The notes under the pieces: generated by a model
The model's input: only the letters and a program-made list of their open reading frames with translations
What the model was told of the DNA's origin: nothing
The model's database searches: none
Assembly (NCBI RefSeq): GCF_032062105.1
Contig: NW_026941099.1
Coordinates: forward strand, 62,001 to 126,000
DNA length: 64,000 nt
Direction of reading: 5' to 3'
Origin: Saccostrea cucullata
Lineage: Eukaryota
Position numbers and translations under genes: made by a program
Shown here: in pieces, positions 2,238 to 51,872 of the stretch
Layout of the letters: each line of letters begins with the position of its first letter
Position numbering within the stretch: the stretch's first letter is position 1

Positions 2238-3605
2238 ATGGCATGGAGATATTTTGTTTTTGTTTGTCATATGGTTATCTATTGTATTCAAGGAAATGAG
2301 AAAGACATTTGTTCAAATCCGTAAGATATCTTTTTTTTATTTTTAAGTTTATTTTAAAATTGAGATAAGTGTGTCATAAAAGCAAAGTTTATCCTTAGAC
2401 TACTTTTAGACTCAACGACGATGGATCAGGGGCATGCTGTTTAAACTTTTACAGGGATGGGGATGTCTGTAAAGGTTGTATGCAATACTTGATTTAGCTG
2501 ATTATTTATCAAATTTTTATGGATCAGTTATATGCTGTCTTATATATGCTTTCTGTATAGATTGAATACAATATTTGATTAAGCAATTAAGATAATCTAA
2601 TTACTTCGTGAAAGAAATGAGAAATGTATGCAACGTCCGTATTTTATAGTAGAATTTGACATAATGTTCTCAAACAATGTATGAGAACATTTACAAAGGT
2701 TCTGAAATTAATAAGCAGTTTACTTTTCAGAATGTCCACCCGGATACTTTGGATTTAATTGTTCTCACCCTTGTCCTGAACAGAGTTATGGACACTTATG
2801 TAGTCTGAAATGTACTAACTGTACAACCTGTAATCATGTATATGGTTGTGCACCGGCAACAGGTAAACCTATGAAATATTTGACATTTTTTCATTGAAAA
2901 TTCATTTACAGTTATTCAATTAGTACGTAAATCATTAACGCAGTAAAGAAAATTGTTTATGCTGTACATTTTAATACATACAGTTTCATTTTATTAGAGC
3001 ATATTAAATCAGACGTCTCTAAAAAAGGAAGTTGTAGCACTAGACCTGTAGCTGTTATCTCGTCGTCCATGCCATTAATAAACACATCAGATGTCCTTGT
3101 AAATAAAAGTTCCATCATGGTATCGATATTTGGTGACAAGACTGAAAATGAAAGTTCTAGTCTAGTATCTTTAAATGATAATAACACACCTCCTAGATTT
3201 TATCTTGCAATAATCATCTATACAACCGGATCACTTATATCTTTTGTAGTTGTACTAATAATTATGAGAGAAATACGTAATATTTGCCAGATGTCCTCTC
3301 CCACAATCAAAAACAAGCCACACAACAGTGGGTTCGTAGAAAACATATATTTTGAAGTTGCTGATGTTATTGATGACATTATTTCACGTGAAGAGATTGC
3401 CTCATCTATGTTAAACATAAATAGTTATGCCAAAGATGGAGCTTCCAAAAAATCAGAGGGTGACTGTAAAGACTATATTTATAGCACTGTATTTAGTGAG
3501 AAGGAAGAGACTGCCAAACCAAAATTATCTTTACAAACACCTAGGTTTGAGGCTAGCAATACCTTAGGCATATGTACTAATAAGAAAAAAAATGTTAATA
3601 AATGA
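2238..3605 (+). CDS. EGF-TM receptor copy A1 (MEGF10/CED-1/SCARF-like miniature receptor), about 295 aa; exons 2238-2320, 2410-2474, 2731-2862, 2998-3605
   Basis: GT-AG introns with consistent phases (2,1,1). Signal peptide MAWRYFVFVCHMVIYCIQG; CCLNFYRDGDVCK; ECPPGYFGFNCSHPCPEQSYGHLCSLKCTNCTTCNHVYGC; TM LAIIIYTTGSLISFVVVLIIM; NIYFEV and YIYSTV motifs. A frameshift near 3585-3600 removes the family C-terminus. Confidence 0.85.
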
Positions 3606-3696
3606 TTGCCCTGACCAGCAAAATGAAATTACTTTTCATCAAATTTCTACAAAAGAAAACAACAAAGAAATCATATCTTTAGAGTCTTTGCAGAGC

Positions 3697-4400
3697 TCTA
3701 CTGAATTTAATGGAAAAGAAATAGAGGTATCAATGAGCGACACCAGTCAGGATACTTATCCATATGTCTAATTTGTATTGGTAAATGAATCAACAGGGAC
3801 AACACCTCTTTAATGTTGTTTCTCACCTACTGATATTTTATTGAATTTCTTTCTCGTTTTGTTGAAAAATATTATGTTGATGCTTTTATTTGATATTACA
3901 TTGTAAATTGTTTGAGTATGATGGAATGAAAATTTATCTATAACCTGAAAAGAGACACAGTCGAAATTTTGATGAAACCATAAAAAATTATCTACAGTTT
4001 TAATATGCTTTAATTTTTCTGAATGTGTTCTGAAACATCTTTCAGAAAATCATTTAAATAAAAATAAAAACATTCCACTGTATTTAACGGAAGAGAAATA
4101 GAGGTAACAATGAGCGACACCAGTCAGGATACTTGTCCATTTGTTGAATTTGTACTGGTAAATGAATCAACAGAGACAACACCTCTTTAATGTTATGTTC
4201 CTCACCTACTGACATGTTTTAATTGTTTGAGTATAGTGGAATGACATTTTCTCTATAACTTGAAACGAGACAGAGACAAAATTTAAACAAAACAGCCAAA
4301 ATTATCCACAGTAGTAATAATCTTTAATTTTCTGAATGTATTTAACAAAATCTTTAAGAATCTTTAAAAAATCTTTAAGAAAAACCTTAAATAAAAGGAA
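3697..4400 (+). repeat. Local tandem duplication (about 375 bp) of the A1 C-terminal coding relic and 3'UTR
   Basis: actgaatttaatggaaaagaaatagaggt...acacctctttaa at about 3700-3813 recurs at about 4077-4189, followed by matching UTR. Confidence 0.8.
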
Positions 4401-48117: not shown

Positions 48118-49026
48118 GGTAGGTCCGTACTTTCAGAATTTTCTGTCACATTGATATTTTTTCAATTTGAATACCATGAACAAGTCTTAAACTTACTAAA
48201 ACACCCATAAAAGATATATCTTTGCGGGTTAATTTTCATACAACCTGTGTCAGCGCACATGCCTCTAAAAATTCAACAGCCAAAATTGAACATAAAAAAG
48301 TGTGATATCATTTTCTCTTAGTAATGCACCAAATCACATCAAATTTATGTTAAAACTTATGAAGATCAAAAATATTTATTTGCCAAGAGAATATTTGAAA
48401 TCTTTACTGCAAAACATTAACAAATTGGTGTTGAAACTGTCCATGTCTTTCAGAGAAAAATCTCAAAATATCTTTATTTTTTATAATTCTCAAATCCAAA
48501 ATGTTTAGATGCCATTTTTTCTTTAAAGCTATTAAGAATTATATCTAATATTAACAAAAACAGCTACTTTATTATGGTTGACCAGAGAATTTTAACAAAA
48601 CAGTCTTTTGAAGACGTATACCCCCATTTTTGGAATATTATTTTTTTTCAATTATTCAATGCAATATTTTTTAAAAGTAAAAATCAAATGGATGATATAG
48701 GCTCTAAATCAATAAAAATAGATCTCAGGTTAGTTTGCTTAAAAGATAATTAAAAAGATTTAGGTCCATAAATGAAATTAAGAATTTTGTGTCTGTGTAT
48801 ATACTAAATGACATATAAATCTTATGGACAGAGTGCAAAGTGTTAATTTCCATAAATAATGTATATTAAATGCTTCATATGCACAATAACACTATAATAA
48901 ACAAATATATACTTGCTAAATCATTTTCAATCACCCAAAAAGATTTATATCAATAGAAAAGTGAAAACAAGAATTTTATATTGATGTGTAAAATTAGAAC
49001 CGGATCTGTAAAAGTGTTGGCCTTCC
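48118..49026. mobile_element. TTAA-TSD non-autonomous DNA transposon (Kolobok-like)
   Basis: ttaa|ggtaggtccgtactttcaga ... tctgtaaaagtgttggccttcc|ttaa. Confidence 0.7.
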
Positions 49027-50310
49027 TTAAGTAACAATTACTATGGAACTTTTAGCATCGTATTTACTTGTTTTAGCCAGTTTTTACCTAACCTTTATAT
49101 TACTGTTCACAAAATATGAACAATTTTGTATGCTGAGATACACTTCCGTTTAATATTGTCTAACTTTTTAAAAATATGGTAACCTATACATGTCTTGCTA
49201 TTATTATTTGATTTTAACTTCATGTATATACCGTGAAAAAAAATGCAATTGGTCTATTTTGATCACACAAAACTCTTTTGATGGAAATACCTTAATGAAA
49301 TGTGGATGCTACTCAAAGAGCTTTGGCATCATACACGAGTATTTCAGCAAAATTAAAATCATCAAAACATAAAACGTTTCTCATTTTCGAATTTTGCGTT
49401 TCTTAAACCCATCTGTTTTAAACGATTTAAAGCTTAAACATCTTGTCATATGCAAACTTGCGTCATTTCATTATTAAACAATAATATCTAATACTGTAAC
49501 ACACAAGAAAGCTCTAAACACTGCACACTAAATAGCGCCGTTTATATGGGAGTTTTATACAGTTAGAGTGATCAACCCTTAGACGTAAGAGAAAAAAGGT
49601 TATTTAAAGTTAACACAATTTGAAATACATTAAAATATACGTAGCATTAAATCAGACCATGAATGATAAAAAATTTCATTTCTTCCATTTACTTTCCTTA
49701 TGTAAGTAAACAACAGTGATTTCTGCTCCCAAGTAGTCTATTGTCTTTTAACATTTTTCCTTTGGAAATAAGGTAGGTACCCTCTGTTGAATATTATCAA
49801 TATGCACACTTCTGTATAATATATTTTTCTCCAAGTCCAATCAAGTACTTTTTATTATTTTTTAGAGCTTCCTTAATCCTAGGTGATAAGCCAGGGCATA
49901 TTTTTGTCATTTCATTAAATAGACTTGGCTACATGTAACACATGTTTGATGGATTTTTCATATTTCCTGCACTTAATTAATACATAATTCTAAAAGGATG
50001 TGTATTTCCTAGCATTTCCTAAATGAAGTTGATCATTAAAATAAATGTTGGATTGATTTCAAATATTTTAGAGAAAAGCGAGTATGACAAATTTGTTAAT
50101 AAAAATAATGAACCTTAATTGAATTTTAACTCTTTTCCTCAAAAATATAAGGAAACATTCGTTGTTTTTCTTCATTTTGTTGAATATTGTAGAATATATA
50201 AGCGAGGGTTGAATGAGTTGACAAATGGTAAGTATTTATTTCATGTAGTACATGACACCAAAAAAATCAGTTTAACGAATTGCAATAATGATACCGAGAA
50301 AGAACTAACC

Positions 50311-51872
50311 ATGTTGATCGGACCTTTTTCGATCACTCTAGTAGTGAATTTGCTATCAAGTCTTACCATTAAAGCCTGCTCAATCAGGTAGGTGACCAAT
50401 AAAAAATTCTATTGTTATGCAATTTATGACGCAGTTTTAAAAGCATAATAAAGGAATGAATATAACTTTTAATTAAGAAATGCAACAGGGGGAGAGAAAT
50501 GCTGCACAAACTTTTACAAAGTCAACAACACCTGTCAAGGTAGTTATTTTTTTATATTATAAATTCTTTAGCTCTTTTATTTTTATGCCAAATCCTAATT
50601 ATTTTCTTAAATAAAGTAGAGTATTTAAGTGGTAGACTAAACAATAAGCCACTTTCAAAATCGGTTAAATGAAGTGTTGAAGGGGCGATCAATGTAAATT
50701 AATATATATGCGTCTTTGATTTTAGCCTGCTTTCCTGGCTATTTTGGTGAGCAATGTAGATTTGCCTGTGAGTATCCGTGGTTTGGACTTCATTGTCTAG
50801 ATAAATGCAACTGTTCAAAGGAATATTGTAATCACATAGATGGTTGTAAAGCAATTCCAGGTATATGAATGTGTCACACGTAACACATGAAGTAAATTTT
50901 GATTTCTGATTCTTTATCTTTTCTATTTAAAAAATTGTTAAGGAATTTTTAAAATTGGAAAGGTCAATTGAAAAATTCTTATAAATTGTTATCAACTATA
51001 TGAAAGCATTTTTTTCGTGAAATGCTTGAAAATGATTTTTTTCTTTTTATTTAAAGAAAACCCGACGACTCTATCAAAACACACCCCGGAAATCGGATTT
51101 GAACTTTTTTCATCTTATAATGGTATTCACTTATTTCTTACTCTTGCGTTAAGTACATGTAGAGCTTGTGTTTCAATCACTTTTGAATAACAATCATAAC
51201 TTTTTTTTTCATTTTTTAGTTAGAGAGATGACCTCCTTATCACCAAACTATAGTTTGACAAGTAATATCTCAGAAAATACGACTAATGATGTGATATCTG
51301 CAAAGGGTAACAGTTTTTTTGATAGAGGTTCTTATATTTTTGCTTTAGTTATCTTGTTTGGCATTGTGATATCCTGTGTAATATTTTTCACAGTTCAAAA
51401 AGCAATTTTTAAATGCAAAAGGATTAATGTTATTCAAAGTAGTAACGAAGCTTCCTCAGATATTTATATGGATATAATCGACAATATGTTAGTAGAAACG
51501 TTCGACGATTCAACCAATGACAACATGCATTTAAATATATATGACGATTCGGCAATTTCTAACGAAATTAACATAGCATTAGATGAAAACGAACCGACCA
51601 CCAGTCTTTGTAAATATCCTCCTGAAGAATGCGAAAAATATATTTATAGCGAAGTGATTAAAAATAAGACTATCAAATCCAACCATACTAATGAAACGGG
51701 AGAAGCGGTGAGTAGTAGTAAAAAAAAAGAAGAGTCAGTTAAAAGTGAGATTGGTATTCTCGATGAATGCATGCAAAACACGAACGATAACCCAATTGAG
51801 TCGATCTCTCAAGACACGCCGATTAAAGCATGTATCTTTGTAAATAAATTTACTGAATCAACTAAACTTTAA
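50311..51872 (+). CDS. EGF-TM receptor copy B2, intact, 330 aa; exons 50311-50387, 50478-50539, 50726-50860, 51057-51122, 51220-51872
   Basis: Exon lengths sum to 993 nt with no stops. Signal peptide, CCTNFYKVNNTCQ, 8-Cys EGF, TM YIFALVILFGIVISCVIFFTV, DIYMDI, NIYDDS and YIYSEV motifs, C-terminus TESTKL. Confidence 0.9.

What the first reader, a model, noticed from the sequence alone, without database searches (positions are those of the whole stretch)
2998..51872. Graded truncation series: ectodomains kept, signalling tails cut at different points
Frame-breaking lesions in the six damaged copies that keep exons 1-3 all fall in the last exon. A3, B1 and A7 (as assembled) stop before the TM, giving secreted 132-137 aa forms. 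A5 stops at the first Tyr motif, A1 and A2 lose only the C-terminal motif, and B2 is full length. The second motif also varies (YIYSTV, CIYSTV, CIDSTV, CINSTV). Stops in a last exon typically escape NMD, so soluble, decoy and signalling forms could coexist. The last exon is also the largest target, so plain decay remains possible.
Basis: partly seen in the sequence, partly recalled or inferred. Interest (0 to 1): 0.75.

Follow-up and report, generated by a model that had tools for sequence, protein, structure and literature searches.

The report
Oyster mini-receptor array: broken tails
A row of small oyster membrane-receptor genes contains copies whose inner tails are cut at different points, which looks mostly like ordinary gene decay, although one or two copies may survive as tail-less or secreted versions.

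Summary
The sequence facts hold. In the window, A1, A2, A3, A5, A7 and B1 keep open, correctly spliced exons 1-3. Every disabling lesion I could find lies in exon 4. B2 is intact.

It is not a clean graded series. A3 has 8 frameshifts and 2 stops. A5 has a MITE, 2 older stops and 2 frameshifts. B1 has lost most of its tail. A1 has two lesions and a 3' duplication. A2 also lost an EGF cysteine. A7 has one unverified 1-nt deletion.

- By copy, "all in exon 4" is not significant (P=0.16-0.22).
- Across 16 damaged copies of the wider array, 15 of 56 lesions lie in exons 1-3, against 13.8 expected.
- Copies differ among themselves (P=0.03).
- B1's exons 1-3 show purifying selection (dN/dS 0.2).
- A5 and a paralog share an old stop with the upstream frame still open.
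- A-type substitution tests have no power.

No RNA run was found, so expression is untested.

Verdict: birth-and-death decay, with a few candidate tail-less or secreted survivors. The scan noted the adjoining part of this array earlier (s1-711498). Neither N gap lies in an exon.

The parts
2238..3605 (+). A1. Exons 2238-2320, 2410-2474, 2731-2862, 2998-3605. A 2-nt deletion near 3579-3592 leads to TGA at 3603-3605. A second stop in the old frame (TAA) lies at about 3769-3771. Product 295 aa.
   Evidence: Identical to database protein P0001.
3700..4460 (+). Tandem duplication of A1's 3' end. A second, unbroken copy of the C-terminal coding end lies at 4122-4187.
6045..6294 (.). Assembly gap between A1 and A2, not in any exon.
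   Evidence: flanks 5453-6042 and 6295-6696 align collinearly to 35998-36599 and 36651-37042
10214..11548 (+). A2. Exons 10214-10293, 10377-10441, 10624-10755, 10896-11548. A single TAG at 11546-11548 (exon-4 codon 217 of 261), with no indel. Cys-to-Arg codon at about 10653-10655 in the EGF exon. Product 309 aa.
   Evidence: Identical to P0016.
13370..15700 (+). A3. Exons 13370-13449, 13539-13603, 13766-13903, exon 4 from 14934. Intron 3 is enlarged to 1030 nt. Exon 4 has 8 frameshift indels (including -29 in the juxtamembrane part) and 2 stops. The first stop gives 137 aa.
21019..21150 (+). A4. A lone EGF-exon fragment with a 1-nt deletion. No other exons were found.
27306..29900 (+). A5. Exons 27306-27385, 27480-27544, 28622-28753, exon 4 from 28893. 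Product 214 aa, ending inside the MITE. Two further stops (exon-4 codons 115 and 142, shared with paralog h_d) and 2 frameshifts lie downstream.
29203..29411 (.). 209-bp MITE inserted in A5 exon 4 right after the NIY of the first Tyr motif. It has 28-nt terminal inverted repeats and a TA duplication, and is high-copy in the genome.
   Evidence: (1111 first-look candidates; 40 scored, 93-100% identical)
30635..32445 (+). A6. Exon 4 only (30635-31134 and 32116-32445), split by a 981-bp transposon at 31135-32115, plus TAG at codon 170. No exons 1-3 were found.
32985..33115 (.). Assembly gap downstream of A6, not in any exon. Continuity across it is unknown.
38094..39552 (+). A7. Exons 38094-38173, 38253-38317, 38494-38625, exon 4 from 38766. 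A 1-nt deletion in the A-run 38789-38793 gives a stop after 132 aa. The old frame stays open for 253 codons (38791-39549) to the normal C-terminus.
43295..45207 (+). B1. Exons 43295-43377, 43463-43524, 44373-44507, exon 4 from about 45143. A +1 frameshift gives TGA at 45205-45207 (about 114 aa). The TM segment is degenerate, with a stop. Homology is lost after about 45330.
47269..47358 (+). Remnant of a B-type tail (first Tyr-motif region), about 2 kb downstream of B1's exon-4 start. The rest of the tail is missing.
50311..51872 (+). B2, intact. Exons 50311-50387, 50478-50539, 50726-50860, 51220-51872. Product 308 aa ending ESTKL.
   Evidence: Intact paralog on another contig. dN/dS 0.24-0.25.

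Best explanation
The window holds the distal part of a tandem birth-and-death array. The family is a small one restricted to oysters. Its members are type-I membrane proteins: signal peptide, one Cys-rich EGF-like module, stalk, TM, a tail with two YxxV/I motifs, and a conserved C-terminal T-x-[LF] end.

The 'series' is a snapshot of unrelated disabling events of different ages. These are transposon insertions (A5, A6), a nonsense change (A2) and small indels (A1, A3, A7, B1). They fall in exon 4 mainly because it is about three quarters of the coding sequence, and because copies hit further upstream, or lacking exons 1-3, were not counted.

Shown: the models, the lesions, their multiplicity, the transposon identity, and the array-wide fit to exon length.

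Inferred: most truncated copies are non-functional or on the way out. A few may have persisted for a time as tail-less or secreted products (B1, the A5/h_d lineage, possibly A3).
For: - Multiple independent lesions in exon 4 of A3 (10), A5 (5), A1 (2) and B1.
- The A5 and A6 insertions are high-copy elements: 1111 and 1128 first-look candidates, 40 scored each.
- Array-wide, 15 of 56 lesions lie in exons 1-3 against 13.8 expected, over 16 damaged copies. Two very degenerate copies, u3 and k_i, were left out.
- The by-copy test gives P=0.155-0.22.
- Upstream and paralogous copies u2, u4, u5, u8 and h_e do carry stops, frameshifts or splice losses in exons 1-3.
- A4 has a broken EGF exon.
- A2 has lost an EGF cysteine.
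- A-type ectodomain dN/dS is 0.98-1.63 for A2/A7/h_f and 1.24 for A3-u10, with all intervals including 1.
- Exons are no better conserved than introns in A3-u10 and A2-A7.
- Exon-wise nearest relatives differ, so halves of copies have been exchanged.
Against: - Copies are heterogeneous. 11 of 16 damaged copies have no lesion in exons 1-3 (P=0.039; dispersion P=0.028).
- All 19 lesions of A1, A2, A3, A5 and A7 lie in exon 4 (P=0.0034, a post hoc set).
- A3's 10 lesions all lie beyond 36% of the coding sequence (P=0.012).
- The 7 independent lesions of A5/h_d all lie beyond 55% (P=0.0037).
- B1's exons 1-3 have dN/dS 0.21-0.22 (0.08-0.42) against both intact B copies, and keep every cysteine.
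- The database annotation carries A1 and A2 as protein-coding.
- Expression was not testable.
Confidence: 0.55

Rival explanations
1. Some truncated copies are functional derivatives kept by selection. B1 would be a secreted one-EGF protein. The A5/h_d lineage (and perhaps A1 and A2) would be membrane-anchored receptors lacking part or all of the tail. The array would then supply signalling, tail-less and soluble forms of similar ectodomains.
For: - B1 ectodomain dN/dS is 0.22 and 0.21 (upper bounds 0.41 and 0.42). Amino-acid divergence in its tail remnants is about three times higher (dN 0.38 against 0.13).
- A5 and h_d inherited the same two stops, yet both keep exons 1-3, stalk and TM open with all cysteines.
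- Lesion-position tests for A3 (P=0.012) and A5/h_d (P=0.0037), and heterogeneity among copies (P=0.028).
- A1 and paralog h_a were truncated independently in the same tail region.
- A1 and A2 are database protein models.
Against: - No RNA or protein evidence.
- A5 itself has since been hit by a MITE.
- dN/dS upstream of the A5/h_d stop is 0.77 (0.43-1.72), not distinguishable from 1.
- A3's exons 1 and 2 are as diverged as its introns.
- A2 lost a cysteine.
- The B1 dN/dS is a path average that includes time before truncation.
- The tests were chosen after seeing the data.
- Exchange between copies can join a healthy 5' half to a dead 3' half.
Confidence: 0.3
2. Part of the series is an assembly artefact. 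A7's single 1-nt deletion in a run of A's would be a consensus error, so A7 would be a full-length gene rather than a 132-aa form.
For: - It is A7's only lesion.
- It lies in a 5-6 A run where A1 has one more A.
- The old frame is open for all 253 remaining codons to the conserved C-terminus.
Against: - Nothing shows the assembly is error-prone at short runs.
- Young duplicates (A2-A7 are 94% identical in exon 4) can stay open by chance.
- No database protein for A7 turned up.
- No reads were laid on A7.
Confidence: 0.2

Closest known systems
Birth-and-death receptor gene clusters with truncated or soluble members (vertebrate KIR/LILR/Ly49-type clusters; recalled, not tested here)
   Same: A tandem array with intact genes, pseudogenes and members that lack the tail or TM. 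It shows variable tyrosine motifs, mosaic copies from exchange between neighbours, and transposon hits.
   Different: The ectodomain is unrelated (one EGF-like module, not Ig or lectin). There are no canonical ITIM or ITAM motifs. No expression or ligand data exist. The truncated members arise from lesions, not from dedicated exons.
Draper / CED-1 / MEGF10 / PEAR1 engulfment receptors and the Draper isoforms
   Same: Type-I receptors with Cys-rich EGF-type ectodomains and tyrosine motifs in the tail. One Draper gene yields isoforms with different tails: Draper-I activates and Draper-II carries an ITIM and antagonises it (PMC9008705, passage read).
   Different: Here the tails differ between gene copies through damage, not through splicing. 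There is a single EGF-like module. No Pfam EMI or EGF model reaches its cut-off. The best hit is a sub-threshold PEAR1-like EGF match in an Ostrea relative.
Uncharacterised Ostrea edulis proteins LOC130048199, LOC125653700, LOC125656126, LOC125649598
   Same: Same architecture and conserved landmarks: cysteine pattern, TM, Y-x-E-[IV] first motif, VYSTV second motif, C-terminal KTESTY[LF].
   Different: 27-31% identity to A1. Nothing is known of their function. One model (P0008) also lacks the C-terminal part.

Membership tests
Unprocessed pseudogenes in a tandem birth-and-death array | Retained exon-intron structure with disabling lesions, next to intact paralogs | tested here: met
   Four-exon models with stops, frameshifts and TE insertions in A1-A7 and B1. 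Intact u7, u10, h_f, B2 and kB.
Unprocessed pseudogenes in a tandem birth-and-death array | Neutral evolution of the damaged copies (dN/dS about 1, lesions spread by target size) | tested here: inconclusive
   Array-wide lesions fit exon length (15 of 56 against 13.8). A-type dN/dS intervals include 1, but so do those of intact A-type ectodomains. B1's exons 1-3 give 0.2.
Draper/CED-1/MEGF10/PEAR1 family | EMI domain followed by multiple EGF-type repeats | tested here: not met
   Pfam gave no family for P0001 or the exon peptides. One EGF-like module only. Best hit PF23301 in P0005: E 0.007, 16.8 bits against a cut-off of 37.5.
Draper/CED-1/MEGF10/PEAR1 family | NPxY and ITAM-like YxxL pair in the tail (motifs recalled) | tested here: not met
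   The tails read show no NPxY. The two Tyr motifs are about 45 residues apart.
ITIM-bearing inhibitory receptors | [SIVL]-x-Y-x-x-[IVL] (consensus recalled) | tested here: not met
   The motifs are N-I-Y-S-E-V, C/Y-I-Y-S-T-V, D-I-Y-M-D-I and Y-I-Y-S-E-V. Position -2 is N, C, Y or D. They fit the generic YxxΦ form only.
Class I PDZ-ligand C-terminus | [ST]-x-hydrophobic at the very end (consensus recalled) | tested here: met
   The ends are TSL, TPL, TSF, TKL and TYL/TYF in intact Saccostrea and Ostrea members. Binding is untested.
Soluble or decoy receptor derivatives | Truncated product is expressed and secreted or displayed | not testable with these tools
   No RNA run was found.
Tc1/mariner-type (Stowaway-like) MITE (A5 insertion) | Short non-coding element with terminal inverted repeats, TA duplication and many copies | tested here: met
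   209 bp; 28-nt arms 89% complementary; TA on both sides; 1111 candidates, with 40 scored at 93-100%. The superfamily name is recalled from the TA duplication.

The most novel reading that the evidence does not exclude
Loss of the last exon's reading frame is how this oyster family makes new receptor classes. B1 would be a long-lived secreted one-EGF protein under purifying selection. The A5/h_d lineage would be a tail-less membrane decoy kept through a block duplication. A1 and A2 would be receptors that kept their Tyr motifs but shed the PDZ-type anchor. The array would then be an invertebrate counterpart of paired or decoy receptor clusters, built by pseudogenising tails rather than by splicing. 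A7 might also be rescued by a cryptic AG at 38793-38794, which would restore the frame.
Probability: 0.2. Interest if true: 0.6.

Novelty: new member of a known kind. Interest (0 to 1): 0.35.

Why it matters
If some of these copies are expressed, they would show a cheap evolutionary route from a signalling receptor to tail-less and secreted binders of the same ligands, in an animal with no antibody system. They would also give named candidates to test (B1 first). If they are not expressed, the locus is a well-resolved example of birth-and-death turnover in a lineage-restricted oyster gene family, useful mainly for annotation. The database now carries two C-terminally truncated copies as ordinary genes, two fused models, and no protein for the intact B2 and h_f.

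Tried and rejected
- RNA evidence. The one run search found no RNA run and a single DNA run of short contigs holding 5% of the sampled words. Laying it on 10000-15999 gave scattered 50-120-nt pieces over A2's exon 4 and high depth on repeats. It gave nothing on the stops or on A3.
- Haplotig idea. Contig C23224 carries a collinear array, but at only 76-86% identity including non-coding DNA. I treated it as a paralogous block, not an allele, so it gives no allele frequencies.
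- First lesion tally (loose gap costs). It over-counted indels: h_d showed 6 frameshifts, against 2 clear ones in a MAFFT check. I recounted with stricter costs and merged neighbouring indels.
- dN/dS for A-type copies. Intervals are too wide to separate constraint from neutrality.
- Pfam on exon peptides and on database proteins and PDB sequence search: nothing above threshold.
- AlphaFold model of P0001 with a 6-row alignment. Mean pLDDT was 36, so no fold search was made.
- B2's exon-4 peptide found no database protein.
- Papers. No paper held all of oyster, EGF-like, ITIM and tandem duplication. Searches listed nothing on this family (listings only). Supplements were not opened.
- A B1-like copy next to the B2 paralog on C6733: none in the 20 kb read.

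Full report
WHAT IS THERE

The window is AT-rich (31% G+C) and has two N runs, 6045-6294 and 32985-33115. Six-frame searches and self-comparison show repeated units on the + strand.

Reading A1 base by base gives a four-exon gene:
- Exon 1 (83 nt): signal peptide.
- Exon 2 (65 nt) and exon 3 (132 nt): a Cys-rich EGF-like module.
- Exon 4 (about 790-810 nt in intact copies): stalk, TM and cytoplasmic tail.

Intact relatives lie in the 44 kb upstream on the same contig (u7, u10) and on contig C23224 (h_f). Their exon 4 has 259-269 codons and ends in FVLVNETTE-T-[SP]-[LF].

Database proteins name the species as Saccostrea cucullata. P0001 (295 aa) is exactly my A1 model and P0016 (309 aa) exactly my A2 model.

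A profile of exon-4 products was searched against 1.84 billion representatives. It found 7 proteins at E <= 0.001. Three are from this contig and four are Ostrea edulis entries or their cluster mates, all named 'uncharacterized'. The Ostrea proteins share the cysteine pattern, TM, both Tyr motifs and a KTESTY[LF] end.

No Pfam model reaches its cut-off. The best hit is a sub-threshold PEAR1-like EGF match. The PDB sequence search was blank. The structure model was too poor to use (mean pLDDT 36).

My own spliced models were searched exon by exon only. The joined step was left out.

THE COPIES

Exons 1-3 of A1, A2, A3, A5, A7 and B1 are open, start with ATG and have GT/AG at every junction. For B1's exon 4, an AG lies 6 nt downstream of B2's acceptor position.

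Exon-4 damage:
- A1: a 2-nt deletion at codon 194, a further TAA at codon 256 of the old frame, and a tandem duplication of the 3' end.
- A2: a single TAG at codon 217 of 261. It also has a Cys-to-Arg change in the EGF exon.
- A3: 8 frameshift indels, including -29, and 2 stops.
- A5: a 209-bp MITE right after NIY, two stops at codons 115 and 142, and 2 frameshifts.
- A6: exon 4 only, split by a 981-bp element, plus a TAG.
- A7: one 1-nt deletion in an A-run at codon 8. The old frame then stays open for 253 codons.
- B1: a +1 frameshift, a degenerate TM with a stop, loss of homology after about 190 nt, and a 90-nt tail remnant 2 kb away.
- A4: a lone EGF exon with a 1-nt deletion.
- B2: intact (308 aa).

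Both inserted elements are high-copy in this genome, with 1111 and 1128 first-look candidates and 40 scored each. Both have terminal inverted repeats.

Product lengths are 137 (A3), 132 (A7), about 114 (B1), 214 (A5), 295 (A1), 309 (A2) and 308 aa (B2).

Intact copies vary too. u10 has Phe in the first motif, and h_f has Asp in the second.

THE GAPS

Neither N run lies in an exon. The flanks of the first align collinearly to one paralogous stretch of the window. Continuity across the second is unknown. Their letters were not looked up.

IS IT MORE THAN CHANCE?

Exons 1-3 make up about 26% of the coding sequence.

- One event per copy: all in exon 4 has P=0.22 for five A copies and 0.155 with B1.
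- Counting lesions: 19 of 19 in exon 4 gives P=0.0034. However, the copies were chosen for keeping exons 1-3, and A4 and A6 were set aside.
- Wider array: I added the upstream copies, the paralogous block on C23224 and C6733. I examined 16 damaged copies and left out two very degenerate ones, u3 and k_i. Lesions that A5 and h_d share were counted once.
- Result: 15 of 56 lesions lie in exons 1-3, against 13.8 expected. There is no overall bias to exon 4.
- The copies are heterogeneous, though. 11 of 16 have none in exons 1-3 (P=0.039; dispersion P=0.028).
- A3's 10 lesions all lie beyond 36% of the coding sequence (P=0.012).

C23224 is 76-86% identical including non-coding DNA, so it is a paralogous block, not a haplotig. 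Its copy h_d shares A5's two stops. The truncation therefore predates the block duplication. Both descendants still keep exons 1-3, stalk and TM open with every cysteine. All 7 independent lesions lie beyond 55% of the coding sequence (P=0.0037).

These last tests were framed after seeing the data.

SUBSTITUTION TESTS

Among intact A-type copies, only the tail shows dN/dS clearly below 1: 0.51-0.64, with upper bounds 0.81-1.00. Ectodomain values are 0.59-0.87, with intervals that include 1.

For damaged A copies:
- A3-u10 ectodomain: 1.24 (0.53-6.4).
- A2-A7: 0.98.
- A2-h_f: 1.63.
- A5-h_d upstream of the shared stop: 0.77 (0.43-1.72); downstream: 1.03.

None of these is informative. Exons are no better conserved than introns in A3-u10. 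Between A2 and A7 the EGF exon is 87% identical while the introns are 94-97.5%. Nearest relatives differ from exon to exon, so halves of copies have been exchanged. That alone could join clean 5' parts to dead tails.

The B type is different.
- B2 and its intact paralog kB give 0.25 (ectodomain) and 0.24 (tail).
- B1's exons 1-3 give 0.22 and 0.21 against B2 and kB, with upper bounds 0.41 and 0.42.
- Its tail remnants have about three times the amino-acid divergence (dN 0.38 against 0.13).
- These are path averages. The remnants were picked by similarity, which biases them low.

EXPRESSION AND NMD

No RNA run was found.

The database holds proteins for A1 and A2. My searches found none for A7, B2 or h_f. 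It holds two fused or chimeric models, P0002 and P0003. What evidence those models rest on is not known to me.

The 'last exon escapes NMD' argument rests on the splice-junction rule of mammals. [quoted passage not shown] It also says some mammalian last-exon stops are NMD targets. Molluscs are untested, as far as my searches show (listing only).

READING

The best-supported view (0.55) is ordinary birth-and-death turnover. Independent hits of different ages are seen mostly in exon 4, because it is the largest target and because of how the copies were chosen.

A real minority signal remains (0.3). B1 is the clearest case. The A5/h_d lineage and A3 are weaker cases. They look as if the part upstream of the break outlived the tail, as expected for secreted or tail-less products.

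A7's single deletion may be real, an assembly error (0.2), or bypassed by a cryptic AG at 38793-38794 that would restore the frame (my inference).

COMPARISON

The pattern resembles vertebrate receptor clusters with truncated members (recalled). It also resembles the Draper isoforms, which have different tails (PMC9008705, passage). Membership in the Draper/MEGF10 family or in ITIM receptors is not met on the features tested.

The earlier scan described the adjoining 12 copies as an array with a few intact genes among many dead ones (s1-711498). My re-reading of those copies agrees.

Noticed in passing
window 10624-10755 vs 38494-38625: Between the young duplicates A2 and A7, the EGF exon is 87% identical while the flanking introns are 94-97.5% and exon 4 is 94%. 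Both dN and dS are raised. This may reflect diversifying selection or a conversion patch from another copy.
   Followed up: partly
L006 (G000:C23224), copy h_f: An otherwise intact paralog has lost two conserved cysteines together: Cys to Phe in exon 1, and the second Cys of the CC pair to Ser in exon 2. This may be loss of one disulfide pair.
   Followed up: no
L004/L005 and window start (G000:C23236): Database model P0002 (726 aa) fuses two neighbouring copies (u10 and u12) into one protein. P0003 (402 aa) is a chimera of parts of more than one copy. The intact B2 and h_f had no protein in the searches.
   Followed up: partly
window 3700-4460: A1's 3' end is tandemly duplicated. The second copy of the C-terminal coding end (4122-4187) is unbroken, while the first carries a TAA.
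   Followed up: partly
window 22180-22659 and 22899-23863: A 160-codon open frame of unknown kind lies next to a 265-bp tandem repeat (3.6 copies), between A4 and A5.
   Followed up: no
window 8715-9311: A 199-codon open frame holds a 78-bp tandem repeat (9008-9164). It is rich in Pro, Ser and Asp and lies between A1 and A2. It may belong to a mobile element.
   Followed up: no
window 38793-38795: An AG just at A7's deletion site would restore the full-length frame if used as acceptor, dropping 9 stalk codons. This is pure inference.
   Followed up: no
L004 (u10) and L006 (h_f): Intact copies differ in which Tyr motif they keep. u10 has NIFSQV plus CIYSTI. h_f has NIYSEV plus CIDSTV.
   Followed up: partly
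P0008 (Ostrea edulis): One Ostrea model of the family also ends before the conserved C-terminal part and has an odd N-terminus, so truncated or chimeric members may be common in oysters.
   Followed up: no
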